43,028 nt of DNA from contig JAAPAO010000285.1 in the NCBI GenBank assembly GCA_013115145.1, positions 1 through 43,028 of the forward strand. Reading direction: 5' to 3'. The position numbers and the translations under genes are program-made. This document shows, one piece after another, positions 8,999 to 15,468 of the stretch. Below the pieces are notes generated by a model. That model saw only the letters and a list, made by a program, of their open reading frames with translations. It did no database searches and had not been told where the DNA came from. The stretch comes from Perkinsus chesapeaki ATCC PRA-425 (taxonomy: Eukaryota > Protista > Perkinsozoa). Each line of letters starts with the position of its first letter. The first letter of the stretch is position 1.

Positions 8999-9200
8999 CT
9001 TACGTTTCTATACCTCACTTTATCTTGTGTCGACCATTTGATTGCTCAGCTTTCCGTAGAATGGAAACCCTTGTAAAAGAGGCTATCCCGTAGTTGGATG
9101 AAATGCTGTGTCCACCAGGAAGGGCTCGTACTCTAAGCCAGCATGCCTTCCCTTTATAATTAGACCCGATAGGTTCAGTTCAGTTCCTTATTTATTACCC

Positions 9201-11090
9201 ATGTTCCTTTACGTTCAGCTCGTCGCTACTCTCCTACCTCTAACCTTGACCTGCACTACCATAGTAGTCTCAAAAGGTGCCTCTAAGACTGGCATTCCCA
9301 TGGTTGCTCACACGGCTGATTGCTCAGAATGTGACACTCGGTTGGGTTTGATACCCCCTAGAGACCACAGTCCTCGTGATGTTCATGCCGTCTATGGTGT
9401 TGGCCATATCTACCCTCGGACATGGTCGAAGCGTGCGGCTATCTACGACGACCCTAATCATCAGCCAACTGGCGTCAATGCTACCGTCCCTGAAGTTCAA
9501 CATACGTACGGCTATTGGGAGTCCGAGTACGGTATGATGAACGAGCACGGTCTGGCAATGGGCGAGTCTACCACGGAGGTCAGCGTGCCCGGCAAGCCTG
9601 GTGTGGACCTAAAGGATCCCGTCAGTGGCGAGCTCGGTCAAGCGGTGTTTTCTATTCGAGAGCTGACAATGATCGGGCTCGAGCGCTGCAAGACCGCTGT
9701 ATGTGCCGTTTCAACTATGGGAGCCATGGCAGAGAAGTACGGCTTCTATCCCGAGAACTGGCAGACTGGTGAGAGCCTCACGATTGTTGATGCTGTTGGT
9801 GATGGCTGGATCTTTCATATAGCCCAAGACTCCACGGGGGAATCGGCCGTATGGGCTGCCCAGAGAGTCCCTGACGGTCATGTAGCAGCCATAGCCAATC
9901 AGTACACCATTAAAGACATACCAGAGTTCCCTAATGATGACTACATGTTCTCCTCCAACCTTCGCTCAGAGGCTTTGGCCTTGGGCTTATGGAACGGCCA
10001 GGAGCCTTTCAGTTGGGTCAGAGTCTATGGCACTGTTAGCTTGCAGTTGCCTATGTACACTAGTGTTAGGATATGGAATGTATTCCGCCACGCAGCTCCC
10101 GATCACGTTGTTGACTTTCACGAGAATCCCTTCGATCTCCCCTTCTCGGTGCCAGCTGACCATCTCCTCGACCTTGAGGACGTAATGGCTATCTATCGTG
10201 ACAACTACGAGGGTACCCAATTCGACTTAACCCAAGGGATCTTGGCTGGCCCATTTCATAGCCCTTACCGTCTTGAAGGTGGCGTCGGTGAGAAGGAAGT
10301 CCCGGGCCAGTTCGCGCGCGGTATATCTATCCCTCGAACGGCCTATACCATGATCGGCTATCCCGACCCTGAGAACCTGGTTCTCTACTACAGCGAAGAC
10401 GCTCCGGCCACCAGCCTGTTCGTGCCTTTCCTCTGCAAGACCCTATCTGAGGCGGCAGGCATGGAGCTCAGCAAAACCTCCAGTTTGTACGCTAAACCGT
10501 TTCAAGTAGGATACAAGGGAGACTTCTCCAACGCCAAGGAGACCGCCTGGTGGGCCTTCGATTTCGTGGCTAATTGGATGGATGCTAACTATGTTAATAT
10601 GTCTCAAGAGTTCGTCAAACCTGCTATAAGCTACTGGCAGCCTAAGCTACTAGAAGCTGCCGCCTCCAAGTCGACTGATACCTGCAAAGCTATTCAGGAG
10701 CATGTTGTGAAGTATTGGTGGAACCTTTCTGACACCCTCGTGGTTCGCTATAATGACGGTTTCTACAACTTCCCTCCCAGTAACCCAGCTGCCGTTGAGC
10801 ACATTGGCTACCCGGCAGACTATCTTGCTATGATCGGCTACAACAACTACTTCTACTCACCCCAGTACGTTCAGCCAGCTCAGTCGACAATGGCTGCTGA
10901 AGATGTCGCGGCGAAGCATTCGACCATTCGAACCTTCCTCATTCTCATACTTGGAGGAATAATTGGACTTATTACTGGCCTCAATATGGAGAAGCATCGT
11001 CGACGTCGAGACCGATTGGCTTCTTCATCCAACTCCGCCACCACAACCCCACAAACCGGCTATACTCGTTTAATAAACTCTACTGTATAA
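9201..11090 (+). CDS. Peptidase C69 (dipeptidase A/secernin-like Ntn hydrolase), signal peptide plus C-terminal TM, intronless
   Basis: First ATG is 9201; the track start is GTG. The signal peptide is followed by CTTIVV (Ntn nucleophile Cys), AHTAD, MMNEHGLAMGEST and WAAQRVPDGHV..AN, with a TM segment FLILILGGIIGLITGL. Confidence 0.85.
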   Translation: MFLYVQLVATLLPLTLTCTTIVVSKGASKTGIPMVAHTADCSECDTRLGLIPPRDHSPRDVHAVYGVGHIYPRTWSKRAAIYDDPNHQPTGVNATVPEVQHTYGYWESEYGMMNEHGLAMGESTTEVSVPGKPGVDLKDPVSGELGQAVFSIRELTMIGLERCKTAVCAVSTMGAMAEKYGFYPENWQTGESLTIVDAVGDGWIFHIAQDSTGESAVWAAQRVPDGHVAAIANQYTIKDIPEFPNDDYMFSSNLRSEALALGLWNGQEPFSWVRVYGTVSLQLPMYTSVRIWNVFRHAAPDHVVDFHENPFDLPFSVPADHLLDLEDVMAIYRDNYEGTQFDLTQGILAGPFHSPYRLEGGVGEKEVPGQFARGISIPRTAYTMIGYPDPENLVLYYSEDAPATSLFVPFLCKTLSEAAGMELSKTSSLYAKPFQVGYKGDFSNAKETAWWAFDFVANWMDANYVNMSQEFVKPAISYWQPKLLEAAASKSTDTCKAIQEHVVKYWWNLSDTLVVRYNDGFYNFPPSNPAAVEHIGYPADYLAMIGYNNYFYSPQYVQPAQSTMAAEDVAAKHSTIRTFLILILGGIIGLITGLNMEKHRRRRDRLASSSNSATTTPQTGYTRLINSTV

Positions 11091-11393
11091 GTACTTTATT
11101 TTCGTAGAATAATTCGCCCCAGGGCGACCCTTCATTAATACTATTTTCATCACATATTAAGTCTGCTCAGTGGCAGTTCTGTCCGTACAAGAGCCCCACC
11201 AAGCCGTGGCTCCGCCCCTTGCCTCTGAGTGATCATCACAATTTATGAGTCCTATGCATTCGCTGTCTCAATGATGTTCGAACGTCAATTTCTCAGCGCT
11301 GTCTTACTCTTTGTGGATGTCTTTGAGTTTTAAGTAAATCTTGGTTATTCGTGTAAAGAGCTCACACTCTAGCCGAACAGGTGTCCAAATAAC

Positions 11394-11456
11394 AAGCAAG
11401 CAGTCGAGCAAGCAGCAAGCATAAGCAGTAAGCATTCCAGTAAGCAAGCAGTCAAG
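11394..11456. repeat. Degenerate (AAGC/AGCA)n low-complexity repeat between convergent genes
   Basis: aagcaagcagtcgagcaagcagcaagcataagcagtaagca...: about nine AGCA units. Confidence 0.7.
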
Positions 11457-11642
11457 TTTATCGATGGACCTTTACGATGTGCTCACCGAGATGTCTCCGT
11501 ATATTCCACGGAACTAATCCAAGGGCAGCTCAAAGCTCAGAAGAGAATCCTTTAGCCGGCGGTGGTAATTCGGCGAGGACGAGTATATATCCCGACACTG
11601 CTGTTTTCACTCGAACTCAACTCCTGACTCTTCTCACACCGA

Positions 11643-13416
11643 TTAGCCCGAGTGCTCGTCAACCGAGCCCGAGACCTGTCCTGGCGGCGTACCAACAGGA
11701 CCATGCGTGAGCTCGCCGGGCCTTTCAGACTCAAGCATCTCCATCGACGGCTCGCTTGTGAACGGATTCTCAAGACTGACAACCCGCTTGCCGAAATGAT
11801 ACCTGAATATCGGTGAAAACCAATAGGGCGTAGGACCAGGCGTTCAACAGGCTACCAAAAGGGGTTGTGGTTGTCGTCTCTGAACATGACCCATGGGCCG
11901 CCTTCAGCGGTGCTTCTTGAACGATCAATCAACACCTGAGCTTCCTCGGGTGGGACCAGAAAGCCTCCACGGAAAACTTGACCTAATAGCGCTAGTGCCG
12001 CCAGTCGAGCATCCTGTCGAAAGCTCACCAGTGTTGTCGATGCTAAGATGGACGTGCTGTCTGCGGCGCCCTTTGCCATGTAATTTAATAAAACATTGAG
12101 TGCAGAATAGATCCACGCAGTCCTCGCAAAGGACAGTTGCGTTGAGGTGCTCGCACTCCTGAGGAAGACGACATCTCTCCCATCCAAGGAAGATACTTCT
12201 TACCTGACAAACAAGTCCTGAAATAACCCTCTTCAAATGGTTGTGCAATTCGGGCCGAGATGCATGAGTTGTCACGTAGCAGTTGTCGCAGAAGAAGCTA
12301 CCACACTGGACACACTGACATGTAGCGATAACCTCATCGCAGGCGCCACCTAGCATAAAGTTCGCATACTCATTCATGGACGAATTGACTTACAGACTAG
12401 TTGCTCCACATCAGCTGTCACATGACCTCGTCGGTTCCCGGTGGCATGGGTGGCGTTGAAGCAGTCCTAAGTATAGCAGCCTTTCCACTTCAGTGGAGAG
12501 TTTCGGCTCTACTTGGCAGTAATAATCCTGACAGACTTCACACTTGAGAACTGCGCTTTTATCCTCGCACTCTTCACACATCACAACCGCCTCGGGCTTC
12601 TTAATTATATCATCCTTCACCTGATGCCAGCCGTACTCACTAACTCTATCTTTCCCTTCACACTTGATTCTTTCTAAAGCGTCTTAAAAAGCCAATATGG
12701 GCCTCCATGTCGGAAAGGAACGTTGTTAGGTCGTACTGCTTAGCAACATATGCCTCCAAGGTCTGCTTCAGGCATCGCACCTGTCAAGGTGATGATGGGC
12801 CATCATGCCTCCAGATGCACCGACCAAGAAGAACTCTTTAGTGGGGTCAACTCCGAGTAGCTGAGGGATTTGTTCACAAATCTGCGGTGTCGATACGGGT
12901 AGCTCGAGCGCTATTCGCTCATGCAGGGCCTTCAGTATGAATCTGGCCTCAACTTGCTCGTCCTGCGCGGCTTGCAGCCTCACGTGTATTTCTCGCGACC
13001 ATCGTCGGTGTCCTTCATTATCTGCTCCAATAGGAACTAAAATTGACCCTATTAATAAAACTGGCAGACTTGGCGGCGGTCATTTTTGTCACTTTAGAGT
13101 ATGTCTTCTGTTTGTGATAGAGTTGGGAATAATGCTCTATTACAGGGTGGACCTTTTGGACCTTCTTTGTTATCAGGTTGTAATACATTGTGGACCCATC
13201 TTGACCGGTGAACTCCTTCCACTCTTTGTGATCAATCTGGGGGTACACCTCAGCAGGATTCGAGAAAAAGTCGGTATGACCGACCTTCGCCTTGCATGCC
13301 TCTTTAGCTATCCACAGACACTGCGGTTCGGCTACTGGATCCATACCTAGTAGCTTCGCTACAGTCACCAGCCTTGACGCTGGTGGATTGTCCACTGATG
13401 ATTGCATCACAACCAT
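11643..13416 (-). CDS. CEP164-like WW-domain protein with coiled coil and tandem B-box-type zinc fingers, multi-exon
   Basis: N-terminal AKLLGMDPVAEPQCLWIAKEACK..EWKEFTGQDGSTMYYNLITKKVQKVHP resembles the CEP164 N-terminal WW region. Three CxxC/His modules follow (CEECEDKSAVLKCEVCQDYYC; CDEVIATCQCVQCGSFFCDNCYVTTH; CEDCVDLFCTQCFIKLH..H), then a WW-like WVMFRDDNHNPFWYH. Stop TAA at 11645-11643. Confidence 0.7.
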
Positions 13417-13617
13417 TTGCCCCAGAAATGCCTCGCAAGAGCAGCACTAGAATGTTACCAACTAAACACATCAACCTGTGGGGTACAACATCGGCACAGT
13501 AGGCATGCATTGAAGAACATTGAAGATAGATAGTCAGACATATCTCAGGCGAACAGGCAACTACAACGACCTTGACCGCCTGTGCGAGAAAGCCGAACTA
13601 ACCAACATGGGGACAGA

Positions 13618-13691
13618 GTTGGATTGTGTCAGGCTTCGCGGGGCGATCAAATGCCTTTACCGCGTAACCTTCATTCGTTCAGCTAACCAAC
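13618..13691 (-). promoter_or_regulatory. Eukaryotic SECIS element, form 2
   Basis: Minus strand reads AUGA-A (core 13674-13671), helix GGUUACGCGG/CCGCGAAGCC (one A.A mismatch, one G.U), unpaired UAAA, apical mini-stem GGC/GCC, 3' UGAC, and lower helix GUUGG/CCAAC. It lies in the 3' UTR of a gene with an in-frame TGA. Confidence 0.85.
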
Positions 13692-13717
13692 ATCAAACGG
13701 TCAAAGGGTCGATGCAT

Positions 13718-15009
13718 CTACCCACTGTTGCTGATGGGCGACCGGGACGCCTCCTCATCATCATTTTCGGGCACCGCTGACTTCAAGCCAGACCCTAGTA
13801 TCGCATCCAGTTCTCCTGCTGTCCTCATCTCTTTCAGTCTTTCAATATTCTCAATGAAATTTCCTCTTAGGAAGATCTGCGGGAAGCTGTTCTGTCCGGT
13901 AAAGGTTGTCAAGGCATTCTCAATTTCAGAGACGCTGGCGAATGTATCGACGTTGATAACCTCCAAGGAGTCGGTTATCTAATGAACCCTCGACCACTTT
14001 ACCATAATAAGCGCTTACCATGTTAAGTTCAGCCACGGCAAGCTTGCATTGGGCAGAGCAAGACCAAGCGAAACATACAATCGCTGCAGTACCGTTGATC
14101 TTCCGATTTACGTATTGCATCGCCTGAATTCCGTACCGACACTTCCGTGATCGTATCTATGCCGCCGCCGCCCTACCTCAGCTTCATTGCTTATCTTATC
14201 CTCTTCGCAACCAGCGTCCGACTTCTGAACGATCTCGGTGATCTTTAGCGTCCCATCCAGGCAGGCTTCGACGTCGGCTGCCATGTCAGGTGACTTGAGG
14301 CTCCAAAAGCGGACCACCTTGCCACTAAGAAAGGCAAAGGCATCCTGAGGTCACCCACGCATTTCGCAGCACTCTTGATTAATCAGAAACTTCCCGAAGT
14401 TGAATGGAATCGGTTTCAGCTTCCCCGTCTTGTGGTTGTACAGGCCACAGTGGAACTTGAGATATCTAATAACCGTTTCAGATATGGTCGCCATGCAACT
14501 CATGATAGATACGTGCTACTCAAAAACTGGATGAGCATCTTCTCCATTAACATTGACTGGGCTTGCCAGTAGAAATACCTCCCCCTTAACCCCTTTGTAG
14601 GGCGCCATAACCCTCGTCACGAATTGGTCTATTTTAGTTTGAACTTTCAAGCCTTGTGTCATGAACTGCCTGAAGGAGGAGCGTCTTTGTCCATCTCTTT
14701 CTAGTCATTCCTACCGGCTCGGAAATCCGATTATTTTGAATTTTTTGTCCCCAAATTTGCTGCCGATTTCCCCAAAGACTTTGTAATCGGCAGCGGTCAA
14801 GCCTCATTTCGAGGCGACGTTGGCCACCAGCACCACATGGCCTGAAACGGTGCACTAAACCAACAATAATAAATACGAGCTTCACCTTCGAGCGTCTTGA
14901 AGTCGAGGGTGTCCCCGTCTATAAGCTCACAGGAGAGCTCATAGAAGCTCTTGGCTGTGATGCGAGGCTTGGTGGCACCAAAGCCTAACGCACTGGCAGC
15001 AGTTCCCAT
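13718..15009 (-). CDS. GPX: Selenocysteine glutathione peroxidase fused to a C-terminal glutaredoxin-like domain, about 335 aa, 7 exons
   Basis: Exons 15009-14886, 14841-14715, 14669-14520, 14465-14373, 14324-14177, 14123-14019 and 13978-13718 total 1008 nt. All introns are GT-AG and phase-compatible. Motifs: VVLVANVASK-U(TGA 14806-14804)-GLT, IIGFPSRQFMTQ, VNVNGEDAHPVFEYLK, PFNFGKFLINQDGKVV; then Grx-like IVCFAWSCSAQCK...TGQNSFPQIFLRG...GELDAIL. Confidence 0.9.
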
Positions 15010-15302
15010 TGGACAGTTGCTCTGGTTCGGGCGTGAAAAAGCAAAATCACTTAATTTGAGATGACCACAAAAGTGGGAGAGCTTTCGAGAGTGAGTGACT
15101 CCAGCTAAAATATACTGTTCTACAATCAGATGTCAGACTAGAGCTTACGAGACAAAAAAGCGAGACGACTGCTGCGATTTTATGGCGCGCGAGAAATATG
15201 TTGGCACACTTCCCATTCTGGAAATGACAGTGATCACGAGATGGCAAGATTTGATTTGACTTGGTCGCCGTCTAGAGTTTGCCACTACTACCTTACGTTA
15301 GT

Positions 15303-15468
15303 ACAGCACTACTATTAGTGCTGTCAGACTGACTATTAGGCCACTATTGACTAATAGCGCTCTCTGGCGTTCAAGCGTCGGAGAGTGCTCCTAAGGTTGA
15401 TTGATTCAATCTCTTGATTTTAGGCGTATTCGTATCGGGACCTGCGACCAGTGACTGGTCACCAGTCG
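15303..15468. other. Cluster of hairpins and palindromes in a divergent intergenic region
   Basis: 9-bp stem at 15303-15324, 7-bp stem at 15333-15357, 14-bp stem with 3 G.U pairs at 15356-15389, and overlapping interrupted palindromes at 15446-15467. Confidence 0.6.

What the first reader, a model, noticed from the sequence alone, without database searches (positions are those of the whole stretch)
13718..15009. Hidden selenoprotein: Sec-glutathione peroxidase fused to a glutaredoxin-like domain
Seen in sequence: a 7-exon, phase-consistent 1008-nt CDS has TGA exactly at the GPx peroxidatic position (NVASK-U-GLT). The frame continues through all GPx motifs and, via a phase-0 intron, into a Grx-fold domain. 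Established: animal GPx1-4 use Sec in this motif, and peroxiredoxin-Grx hybrids (PGdx) exist in bacteria. Inference: this is a self-contained peroxidase plus reductant module, an architecture I do not recognise for Sec-GPx. Automated annotation would truncate or split it. I could not check novelty against databases.
Basis: partly seen in the sequence, partly recalled or inferred. Interest (0 to 1): 0.92.

Follow-up and report, generated by a model that had tools for sequence, protein, structure and literature searches.

The report
Selenocysteine glutathione peroxidase fused to glutaredoxin
This is a real, previously undescribed kind of selenium-containing peroxidase gene in a Perkinsus-like shellfish parasite, in which the peroxide-destroying enzyme is joined to a glutaredoxin-type domain, and which gene-finding software truncates or mis-splices because its selenocysteine codon looks like a stop.

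Summary
On the minus strand, seven GT-AG exons (15009-13718) give a 1008-nt frame. Its single in-frame TGA (14806-14804) aligns with the peroxidatic Cys of bacterial GPx.

- **SECIS:** a SECIS-type stem-loop lies 43 nt after the stop (13691-13618). It is the only such element my scan found in the 43-kb window.
- **DNA check:** contigs from two samples carry the TGA.
- **Homologues:** Perkinsus olseni and a second Perkinsus lineage have the same gene. Exon lengths, Sec codon, SECIS (with compensatory pair changes) and the Grx fusion are all shared.
- **Selection:** both domains there show dN/dS of about 0.03-0.04. Their Grx exon has no ATG, and intron 5 changes length by 1 nt, so the Grx domain can only be made as a fusion.
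- **Annotation:** GenBank models of the P. olseni gene ("Glutathione peroxidase 7") start after the TGA or skip the Sec exon.

The window copy is only 51% identical to them and is not syntenic. It has lost canonical motifs: WNF is FNF, CPHC is C-SAQ-C, and GG is EN. It is probably a divergent paralogue.

No RNA data were available, and the Sec machinery could not be tested here. I found no paper describing a GPx-Grx fusion.

Verdict: a new variant of a known kind, of moderately high interest.

The parts
14886..15009 (-). Exon 1 (124 nt). Start ATG at 15009-15007. The N-terminus MGTAAS fits the N-myristoylation pattern, and SALGFGATKPR is conserved in the homologues.
   Evidence: 58% aa identity to P. 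olseni exon 1.
14715..14841 (-). Exon 2 (127 nt). The Sec exon, encoding VVLVANVASK-U-GLT.
   Evidence: 80% aa identity to P. olseni exon 2. The piece after the TGA hits Pfam GSHPx at E 0.029.
14804..14806 (-). In-frame TGA, selenocysteine codon 54, at the peroxidatic position.
   Evidence: Aligned with Cys of bacterial GPx. TGA sits at the same column in L003, L006 and L007. Present in DNA contigs of two samples.
14520..14669 (-). Exon 3 (150 nt). Contains the catalytic Gln85 (SRQF) and the VNVNGEDAHPVF block. There is no resolving Cys.
14373..14465 (-). Exon 4 (93 nt). The motif PFNFGKFL has Phe155 (14404-14402) in place of the catalytic Trp. Asn156 is kept.
14177..14324 (-). Exon 5 (148 nt). 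End of the GPx domain (to about residue 188, with the conserved Cys186), followed by a poorly conserved linker of about 25 aa.
14124..14176 (-). Intron 5 (53 nt, GT..AG, phase 0). This is the joint between the GPx and Grx parts. If retained, the frame stops at TAA 14110-14108.
   Evidence: An intron sits at the same position in P. olseni (46 nt) and in L006 (47 nt), and is the least conserved segment (55%).
14019..14123 (-). Exon 6 (105 nt). N-terminal part of the Grx fold, with the motif SCSAQC at 14063-14046. That motif comprises Cys236, Ser237 at the position of the catalytic Cys, and Cys240.
13718..13978 (-). Exon 7 (261 nt including TAG 13720-13718). C-terminal part of the Grx fold. TGQNSFPQIF keeps the cis-Pro motif, GG is replaced by EN, and an acidic tail of about 30 aa is absent from the homologues.
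   Evidence: Pfam Glutaredoxin E 1e-4. PDB glutaredoxins E 1e-4 to 1e-3..
13618..13691 (-). SECIS element in the 3' UTR. Its parts are helix I (13691-13687 with 13622-13618), ATGA 13674-13671, helix II of 11 positions, a UAAA bulge, a GGC/GCC mini-stem, and GA 13630-13629.
   Evidence: The MFE fold gives helix II and the mini-stem. It is the only hit of my scan in the window, against 1.4 expected per shuffled window. It is conserved with 3 compensatory pairs in the homologues. Rfam SECIS_1 matches full length at 15.3 bits, below the gathering score of 35.

Best explanation
The locus is one gene for a 335-residue selenoprotein of about 36.6 kDa. It has three parts: an N-terminal GPx4-like (short-loop, monomer-type) glutathione peroxidase domain whose peroxidatic residue is selenocysteine (UGA codon 54), a linker of about 25 residues, and a C-terminal glutaredoxin-fold domain derived from a class I dithiol Grx.

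The UGA is recoded by a SECIS stem-loop that lies after the Grx stop codon. The mRNA must therefore span both domains, and removal of the phase-0 intron 5 joins them in frame.

The gene belongs to a family found so far only in Perkinsus-like organisms. The copy in this window is a divergent, probably paralogous member. It keeps Sec, Gln and Asn of the GPx site but has Phe for the catalytic Trp. Its Grx site reads C-S-A-Q-C instead of Y-C-P-H-C, and the GG motif is lost.

Inferred mechanism:
- A hydroperoxide oxidises the selenolate to selenenic acid.
- Because the GPx domain has no resolving Cys, the selenenic acid is reduced through a thiol of the tethered Grx-like domain.
- In the canonical P. 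olseni form this would go through a Se-SG or Se-S(Grx) intermediate resolved by the CPHC pair and glutathione, as in peroxiredoxin-glutaredoxin hybrids.
- In this copy it would go through Cys236 and/or Cys240, with an unknown final reductant.
- The conserved N-terminal MGxxxS pattern suggests myristoylation and action at a membrane, for example on lipid hydroperoxides.

Shown here: gene structure, Sec codon, SECIS, conservation of the fusion, and purifying selection. Inferred: the splicing in this species, Sec insertion, the electron path, and lipidation.
For: - **Exon model and single TGA:**
- **GPx match:** full-domain GPx alignment with the TGA opposite Cys, E 3e-22.
- **SECIS:** found by fold. 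It is unique in the window, against 1.4 chance hits per 86 kb of shuffled sequence, which gives roughly 0.01 expected in the 300-nt 3' UTR. Rfam SECIS_1 aligns to it full length, below threshold.
- **Real TGA:** present in contigs of two DNA samples.
- **Homologous loci:** L003 and L007 (P. olseni) and L006 (Logan SRR12548988) have the same exon lengths (124/127/150/93/148 or 145/105), the same TGA column, the Grx fusion and a SECIS 46 nt after the stop.
- **SECIS pairs:** 90.6% paired against 25-48% when the partners are slid, with 3 compensatory pairs.
- **Selection:** dN/dS between L003 and L006 is 0.032 for GPx and 0.036 for Grx, at dS about 1.0-1.3.
- **Fusion is obligatory there:** intron 5 is 53, 46 and 47 nt in the three lineages and only 55% conserved. 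Exon 6 of the P. olseni clade has no Met before CPHC, so the Grx domain can only be translated as a fusion.
- **Independent gene models:** P0061 and P0034 join GPx to Grx. P0061 passes the Pfam cut-offs for both GSHPx and Glutaredoxin.
- **Grx type:** the P. olseni Grx domain matches yeast Grx2 and Grx1 structures at E 1e-17, and its GPx part matches GPx5 and GPx4 structures.
- **Genome context (unchecked notes):** notes on the same genome report a tRNA-Sec, a Sec-containing selenophosphate synthetase and other selenoproteins.
Against: - No transcript evidence. The two RNA runs with this species label hold nothing from the locus.
- Rfam does not call the SECIS at its gathering score. A 3.4-kb scan missed it altogether, and no SECIS family matched the P. 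olseni element.
- Sec machinery could not be checked in this window.
- This copy lacks the catalytic Trp of GPx and the catalytic Cys and GG of Grx, so its activity and the role of its Grx-like domain are uncertain.
- Exon 6 here begins Ala-Met, so a separate start is formally possible in this species.
- dS between this copy and P. olseni is saturated, so constraint on this lineage alone cannot be measured.
- The spliced protein could not be passed to the Pfam, structure-prediction or large-database tools, because it has no reference.
Confidence: 0.8

Rival explanations
1. The mRNA gives two products rather than a fusion. In this reading intron 5 is retained, so the Sec-GPx ends at TAA 14110-14108. 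The Grx-like protein is then made on its own from ATG 14120, for example from an mRNA trans-spliced with a spliced leader at the intron 5 acceptor, as perkinsids and dinoflagellates are known to do (from general knowledge).
For: Exon 6 starts GCG ATG, three bases after the AG acceptor. A retained intron gives a stop 23 codons on. No RNA data exist to exclude it.
Against: - The only SECIS lies after the Grx stop, so the GPx message must run through the Grx exons.
- In the P. olseni clade the same phase-0 intron is present, but exon 6 has Lys where this copy has Met, and there is no other Met before the active site. The Grx domain there is nevertheless under dN/dS 0.036.
- Intron 5 length varies 53/46/47 nt, and the segment evolves like non-coding DNA.
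- Independent gene predictions join the two parts.
Confidence: 0.06
2. The gene is a decaying or neo-functionalised paralogue. It may still be transcribed, but it no longer works as a peroxidase-plus-reductant unit. The canonical copy elsewhere in the genome would do that job, and this copy would be a pseudo-enzyme or have another thiol or selenol function.
For: - This lineage has lost residues that are conserved across the GPx and Grx homologues compared here: Trp of WNF, the N-terminal Cys of CxxC, GG, and the Lys of TGQK.
- It is only 51% identical to the P. olseni gene (40% in Grx, 28% in the linker), while a neighbouring gene is 82% identical.
- There is no synteny, and a P. olseni-like contig that is syntenic up to the neighbouring WW gene lacks this gene.
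- An unchecked note reports a second Sec-GPx fused to a dithiol Grx in the same genome.
Against: - The 335-codon frame is intact and all 12 splice sites are canonical.
- The costly Sec codon is kept, and the SECIS is kept with compensating changes.
- pN (0.36) is well below pS (0.83) in the Grx part.
- The core Grx fold motifs and the cis-Pro are kept, and two Cys still flank the active-site turn.
Confidence: 0.12
3. The gene model is a chance construct or an assembly artefact, and the TGA is a sequencing error or a true stop.
For: None beyond the lack of RNA data.
Against: The TGA is present in two independent DNA samples. The structure is identical exon by exon in three other loci. The SECIS is conserved.
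Confidence: 0.01

Closest known systems
Perkinsus olseni 'Glutathione peroxidase 7' (KAF4680960.1 / A0A7J6NBS7, KAF4652740.1 / A0A7J6KZZ5, KAF4723145.1)
   Same: Homologous gene with the same seven exons, the same Sec TGA, a SECIS after the stop, an N-terminal MGxxxS and a C-terminal Grx domain.
   Different: The P. olseni gene is 51% identical and lies in another genomic neighbourhood, between PEX1 and a kinase. It keeps WNF, CPHC and GG and lacks the acidic tail. The database models are wrong (truncated, Sec exon skipped, or intron retained), and the records name them only 'Glutathione peroxidase 7', with no mention of selenocysteine or a fusion.
Selenocysteine GPx4-type (phospholipid hydroperoxide) glutathione peroxidases of animals
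   Same: Both have Sec in NVAS(K/Q)-U-G, Gln and Asn of the tetrad, a short loop before the WNF position (monomer type), no resolving Cys, and a eukaryotic SECIS in the 3' UTR.
   Different: GPx4 has no fused domain and uses free glutathione or protein thiols. The Trp of the tetrad is Phe here.
PGdx, the peroxiredoxin-glutaredoxin hybrid of Haemophilus influenzae and other bacteria (PMC1361801)
   Same: A thiol peroxidase with a Grx domain fused to its C-terminus, giving a glutathione-dependent peroxidase with a built-in reductase. This is the best analogy for how the locus may work.
   Different: The peroxidase domain is a Prx5-type peroxiredoxin with Cys, not a GPx with Sec. It is bacterial, its Grx is canonical, and there is no homology in the peroxidase part beyond the thioredoxin fold.
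Thioredoxin glutathione reductase (TGR) of mammals and flatworms
   Same: A selenoprotein in which a class I Grx domain is fused to a redox enzyme and exchanges electrons with its Sec centre. TGR Grx domains are among the PDB matches.
   Different: The Grx is N-terminal, the partner is a flavoprotein reductase, and Sec is in the C-terminal GCUG.
Class I dithiol glutaredoxins (yeast Grx1 and Grx2, human Grx1 and Grx2)
   Same: Same fold, the TGQ..(T/S)xP cis-Pro motif, and a C-terminal helix. The P. olseni domain matches them at E 1e-17.
   Different: In the window copy the catalytic Cys is Ser with a Cys one residue earlier (C-SAQ-C), GG is EN, and the Lys residues conserved in the class I Grx sequences aligned here are absent; that these residues bind glutathione is from general knowledge, not tested here.

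Membership tests
Glutathione peroxidase (Pfam PF00255 GSHPx) | Sequence similarity over the whole GPx domain | tested here: met
   blastp of the spliced product against a bacterial GPx covers residues 21-188 against 10-166 at 36% identity, E 3e-22. The homologue P0061 passes the Pfam cut-off even without the Sec exon (28.4 against 27 bits). Single exons of the window give only E 0.029. The spliced protein could not be given to Pfam.
Glutathione peroxidase (Pfam PF00255 GSHPx) | Peroxidatic Sec or Cys in the NVAS-x-(U/C)-G motif | tested here: met
   TGA codon 54 lies in NVASK-U-GLT, opposite the Cys of NTASQCGFT.
Glutathione peroxidase (Pfam PF00255 GSHPx) | Catalytic tetrad partners Gln, Trp and Asn | tested here: not met
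   Gln85 and Asn156 are present, but the Trp position is Phe155 (PFNF). The P. olseni and L006 homologues keep PWNF. The feature is therefore met in part only.
Eukaryotic selenoprotein (UGA recoded by a 3' UTR SECIS) | In-frame UGA aligned with Cys or Sec of homologues | tested here: met
   The DNA of two samples confirms it.
Eukaryotic selenoprotein (UGA recoded by a 3' UTR SECIS) | SECIS with the AUGA..GA quartet, helix II of about 11 bp, unpaired AA, and helix I | tested here: met
   All parts are present at 13691-13618. They are conserved, with compensatory changes, in three other loci.
Eukaryotic selenoprotein (UGA recoded by a 3' UTR SECIS) | Score at or above Rfam's gathering score for a SECIS family | tested here: not met
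   SECIS_1 scores 15.3 bits against a gathering score of 35, E 1.8 in a 151-nt search, although the alignment is full length. The 3.4-kb search gave no hit, and L003 gave none.
Eukaryotic selenoprotein (UGA recoded by a 3' UTR SECIS) | Sec machinery in the genome (tRNA-Sec, SPS2, eEFSec, SBP2, PSTK, SepSecS) | not testable with these tools
   The window holds no tRNA. Only unchecked notes report a tRNA-Sec and a Sec-SPS2 elsewhere in this genome.
Eukaryotic selenoprotein (UGA recoded by a 3' UTR SECIS) | Selenium actually incorporated | not testable with these tools
   Needs 75Se labelling or mass spectrometry.
Class I dithiol glutaredoxin (Pfam PF00462) | Grx-fold sequence similarity | tested here: met
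   Exons 6 and 7 against the P. olseni Grx domain give E 1.4e-16, and against CPYC-type domains E 2e-9. Exon 7 alone scores 22.8 bits on Pfam against a cut-off of 22.9, and matches PDB Grx entries at E 1e-4.
Class I dithiol glutaredoxin (Pfam PF00462) | C-P-(Y/F/H)-C active site with the N-terminal nucleophilic Cys | tested here: not met
   The window has S-C-S-A-Q-C, with Ser237 at the catalytic position, Cys236 one residue before it, and Cys240 kept. The homologues have S-Y-C-P-H-C.
Class I dithiol glutaredoxin (Pfam PF00462) | Glutathione-site motifs: (T/S)-x-cisPro and G-G-x-(S/D)-D | tested here: not met
   SFP is kept, but GGNSD is ENIER and the Lys of TGQK is Asn. The feature is met in part only.
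Peroxiredoxin-glutaredoxin hybrid (PGdx) | Prx5-type peroxiredoxin domain with a peroxidatic Cys, N-terminal to the Grx | tested here: not met
   The N-terminal domain is GSHPx, not AhpC-TSA or Redoxin. This is an analogy of architecture only.

The most novel reading that the evidence does not exclude
Perkinsids carry a lineage-specific family of membrane-tethered, self-recycling selenoperoxidases. In them the fused Grx domain forms a selenenyl-sulfide directly with the Sec of the GPx domain. In the divergent copy in this window, the shifted C-xxx-C site and the Trp-to-Phe change mark a switch to a different, glutathione-independent electron donor or substrate. That would make it a natural example of co-evolving active sites in a fused peroxidase-reductant pair.
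Probability: 0.2. Interest if true: 0.8.

Novelty: new variant of a known kind. Interest (0 to 1): 0.62.

Why it matters
- **Antioxidant defence.** Perkinsus species are major parasites of oysters and clams. They lack catalase and are thought to rely on ascorbate peroxidase and thiol peroxidases to survive the host oxidative burst (PMC6642578). A selenocysteine GPx with its own tethered Grx adds an unrecognised component to that defence, and shows that these parasites use selenium.
- **Redox enzymology.** A natural GPx-Grx fusion joins PGdx and TGR as evidence of which redox partners work together. The GPx domain here lacks a resolving Cys, so the fusion suggests how its Sec might be recycled by a tethered thiol domain. 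The pair of forms, canonical in P. olseni and altered here, is a ready-made experiment on active-site co-evolution.
- **Annotation.** This is a worked case in which public gene models of a selenoprotein are wrong in three different ways.

Tried and rejected
- **Rfam over 12000-15400:** no SECIS. Only a narrow rerun gave a sub-threshold SECIS_1 hit.
- **Pfam on single exons:** too weak to be useful.
- **RNA runs:** the two with the species label hold nothing from the locus, so splicing could not be checked.
- **HMMER search of 1.84 billion representatives with exon 7:** the top hits were multi-Grx (PICOT-like) proteins that rank high only through repeated domains. The true homologue P0034 was rank 34 and was recognised only after a local search with exons 6 and 7 joined.
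- **Metagenome scans:** exon 7 found nothing, and exon 3 found only two ordinary bacterial GPx genes. I used these as reference GPx sequences.
- **The search for homologous proteins with P0034:** only ordinary single-domain Grx proteins beyond its own cluster. With an exon-3 alignment it found no candidates at all.
- **MAFFT of exon pieces with P0061:** several pieces were misplaced, so the alignment was not used.
- **ESM Atlas look-alikes of P0061:** GPx-only clusters, none with GSHPx plus Glutaredoxin. This is a lead that the architecture is rare, not proof.
- **P0040 / L009:** this looked like an exon-7-type fragment from another organism, but it is a Grx-like stretch behind an unrelated protein, not a GPx fusion.
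- **Synteny:** there is none between the window and the P. olseni locus. The syntenic P. olseni-like contig L004 ends its match at the WW gene.
- **Structure prediction and fold search:** not run. The spliced protein has no reference and long sequences may not be typed, and the available database models lack the Sec exon.
- **Literature:** no paper on a GPx-Grx fusion or on Perkinsus selenoproteins in the searchable library.
Full report
**The observation**

Seven exons on the minus strand give 1008 nt:
- 15009-14886
- 14841-14715
- 14669-14520
- 14465-14373
- 14324-14177
- 14123-14019
- 13978-13718

All six introns are GT..AG and measure 44, 45, 54, 48, 53 and 40 nt. There is one in-frame TGA, at 14806-14804 (codon 54, in NVASK-U-GLT), and the terminal TAG is at 13720-13718. 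ATG 15009 is the first in-frame ATG after an upstream stop. The predicted product has 335 residues and a mass of 36.6 kDa.

**The GPx part**

The tools do not accept a protein read through a stop by reference, and a spliced protein has no reference. I therefore worked with single exons in the database tools and with the joined sequence in local scripts.
- Single exons give only weak Pfam hits (GSHPx E 0.029, Glutaredoxin E 1e-4).
- Joined, residues 21-188 align end to end with a bacterial GPx that a metagenome scan happened to return (L001). Identity is 36% and E is 3e-22, with the TGA codon opposite the peroxidatic Cys.
- Gln85 and Asn156 of the catalytic tetrad are present, but the Trp is Phe155 (PFNF).
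- There is no resolving Cys in the helix where thioredoxin-dependent GPx enzymes have one.
- The loop before the WNF position is short, as in monomeric GPx4-type enzymes.

**The SECIS**

A SECIS-type stem-loop starts 43 nt after the stop codon. Its parts are:
- helix I, 13691-13687 pairing with 13622-13618
- ATGA, 13674-13671
- helix II, 11 positions with 10 paired
- a UAAA bulge
- a GGC/GCC mini-stem
- GA, 13630-13629

The minimum-free-energy fold reproduces helix II and the mini-stem. A crude SECIS scan of my own finds this and nothing else on either strand of the 43-kb window. Shuffled windows give 1.4 hits each, so about 0.01 would be expected in the UTR of up to 300 nt.

Rfam is less kind. 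A 3.4-kb scan reported nothing. A 151-nt scan gave SECIS_1 over its full length, with every hallmark aligned, but at only 15.3 bits against a gathering score of 35. I count this as met on features and not met on Rfam's score.

**Is the TGA real?**

Logan contigs of two DNA samples (X3 from 2020 and X4 from 2022) cover the codon with no other letter. The only difference in the coding region is a synonymous G>A at 14995. The two small RNA runs with the species label hold nothing from the locus, so no transcript evidence was obtainable.

**Relatives**

An exhaustive HMMER search with exon 7 found no near-identical protein. Its top ranks were multi-Grx proteins. A local search with exons 6 and 7 joined picked out P0034 as by far the best single-domain match (E 1.4e-16).

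P0034 is KAF4680960.1, 'Glutathione peroxidase 7 [Perkinsus olseni]'. Its 224 residues are the second half of a GPx, a linker and a Grx domain, and it starts at the first Met after where a TGA would be. Reading its locus L003 shows the complete gene:
- the same MGxxxS start
- the same seven exons, with lengths 124/127/150/93/148/105 identical to the window's
- TGA in NVASK-U-GLT
- a phase-0 intron between the GPx and Grx parts
- a SECIS 46 nt after the stop

Two other P. olseni assemblies (L007, L008) and a more divergent Logan contig (L006, from SRR12548988) have the same structure.

The GenBank models are each wrong in a different way. P0034 starts after the TGA, P0061 skips the Sec exon by reading into intron 1, and P0062 retains intron 6.

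**Is it really a fusion?**

Four lines of evidence say so.
1. The only SECIS lies after the Grx stop, so the GPx message has to contain the Grx exons.
2. Between L003 and L006, dS is about 1.0-1.3, while dN/dS is 0.032 for the GPx domain and 0.036 for the Grx domain. Both parts are therefore translated and constrained.
3. In that clade exon 6 has no Met before the CPHC site. Intron 5 is the least conserved segment (55%) and differs in length by one base (46 against 47 nt, and 53 nt here). The Grx domain can therefore only be read in frame after splicing to exon 5.
4. Independent gene predictions join the parts, and P0061 passes the Pfam cut-offs for both GSHPx and Glutaredoxin.

The SECIS alignment of the four loci keeps 90.6% of cells paired, against 25-48% when partners are slid, with three compensatory pairs. 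The first 150 nt of the 3' UTR are as conserved between L003 and L006 as the exons are (82%).

**How this copy differs**

The window's organism is a Perkinsus-like species other than P. olseni. A neighbouring peptidase C69 gene is 82% identical to the P. olseni protein.

The GPx-Grx gene is only 51% identical overall: 62% in GPx, 28% in the linker and 40% in Grx. The flanks share nothing. A P. olseni-like contig that is syntenic with the window from 9246 to 13417 carries an aspartic protease where the window has this gene. An unchecked note from this scan reports a second 'Sec-glutathione peroxidase fused to a dithiol glutaredoxin' elsewhere in the same genome. Together these point to a divergent paralogue, although I could not check the other copy.

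Relative to the P. olseni clade and to ordinary class I Grx proteins, this copy differs as follows:

| Feature | P. olseni clade | This window |
|---|---|---|
| GPx tetrad motif | PWNF | PFNF |
| Grx active site | SYCPHC | SCSAQC (Ser at the catalytic Cys, a Cys one residue earlier, second Cys kept) |
| Motif after the TGQ block | TGQK | TGQN |
| GG motif | IGGNSD | IENIER |
| C-terminus | no tail | acidic tail of about 30 residues |

The P. olseni Grx domain is a canonical class I dithiol Grx (E 1e-17 to yeast Grx2 structures), and its GPx part matches GPx5 and GPx4 structures.

The window copy is not obviously dead. Its frame, its 12 splice sites, its Sec codon and its SECIS are intact, and pN (0.36) is well below pS (0.83) in the Grx part.

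**Mechanism**

My best reading is a Sec-GPx whose selenenic acid is recycled through the tethered Grx-fold domain. This is analogous to the bacterial peroxiredoxin-glutaredoxin hybrid PGdx (PMC1361801) and to the Grx domain of TGR. It is straightforward for the P. olseni form (a CPHC site and a putative glutathione site).

For this copy the thiols available are Cys236 and Cys240, and the final reductant is unknown. It may have changed partner or substrate, or be losing function. I give that second possibility about 0.12.

The conserved N-terminal M-G-x-x-x-S followed by SALGFGATKPR fits the myristoylation pattern and suggests a membrane location. This is inference only.

**Novelty**

I found no paper on a GPx-Grx fusion, on a Perkinsus selenoproteome, or on this protein. 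A survey of algal selenoproteomes lists other fusions but not this one (PMC7539508). The 100 nearest large ESM Atlas clusters to P0061 are GPx-only.

The homologues are already in GenBank and UniProt, but truncated and named only as GPx7. I class this as a new variant of a known kind: real, conserved within perkinsids, and relevant to the antioxidant defence of catalase-less shellfish parasites (PMC6642578). It is still a domain fusion of two well-known folds, and it has no expression or activity data.

**What I could not do**

- Pfam, structure prediction, fold search or a large-database search with the full spliced protein.
- Any RNA-level test of splicing.
- Any test of the Sec machinery.
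- A search of other perkinsid, dinoflagellate or chromerid genomes.

Noticed in passing
window 13018-13416 (-): A 132-aa ORF with a WW-domain-like stretch lies directly downstream on the same strand, which limits the 3' UTR of the GPx-Grx gene to about 300 nt. It is conserved (about 73-78% aa) in the P. olseni-like contig L004. Pfam gave no hit.
   Followed up: partly
window 13417-15009 compared with L004:5049-7475: There is a synteny break. L004 (Logan SRR12548988) matches the window from 9246 to 13417 and then carries an aspartic protease ORF instead of the GPx-Grx gene. The same run holds its GPx-Grx gene next to PEX1 (L006).
   Followed up: partly
window 9108-11090 (+): A single-exon peptidase C69 (dipeptidase) gene is 82% identical to a P. 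olseni protein. It has paralogues at about 55% in P. olseni, P. chesapeaki and P. marinus. I used it to place the organism.
   Followed up: yes
window 15027-15158: One contig of DNA run X4 skips 130 nt here and has 62 other letters instead. This looks like an allelic indel or replacement just upstream of the start codon, in the likely 5' UTR or promoter. X4 contigs also break at 14741-14768 and 14974-14995, which suggests heterozygosity.
   Followed up: no
window 15009-14992; L003:2623-2640: The N-terminal M-G-x-x-x-S (MGTAAS here, MGGMQS in P. olseni) fits the N-myristoylation pattern and is followed by the invariant SALGFGATKPR. An unchecked note reports similar signals on ascorbate peroxidases of this genome.
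   Followed up: partly
L003, L007, L008 (P. olseni GenBank assemblies): There are three different mis-annotations of one selenoprotein gene. KAF4680960.1 starts after the TGA, KAF4652740.1 skips the Sec exon, and KAF4723145.1 retains intron 6.
   Followed up: yes
L009:532-1092 (Logan ERR12944157): A Grx-like stretch (…FTQPLCPKSM, then TAG, then VVQSLTDGHIEAKVVEVDT…FPQIYIDGKFVGG) is interrupted by an in-frame TAG and follows an unrelated upstream ORF. This may be an organism with a reassigned stop codon or a frame artefact. It is not a GPx fusion.
   Followed up: no
window 13697-13768 (-): Rfam gave a weak match to a Giardia C/D snoRNA (GlsR16, 18.7 bits against a gathering score of 100, E 1) overlapping the stop codon. 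It is almost certainly chance.
   Followed up: no
window residue 186 (codon in exon 5) and the homologues: Cys186 in EAC(L/I)(D/E)G at the end of the GPx domain, and the second Grx Cys (Cys240), are the only cysteines conserved in all four family members.
   Followed up: no
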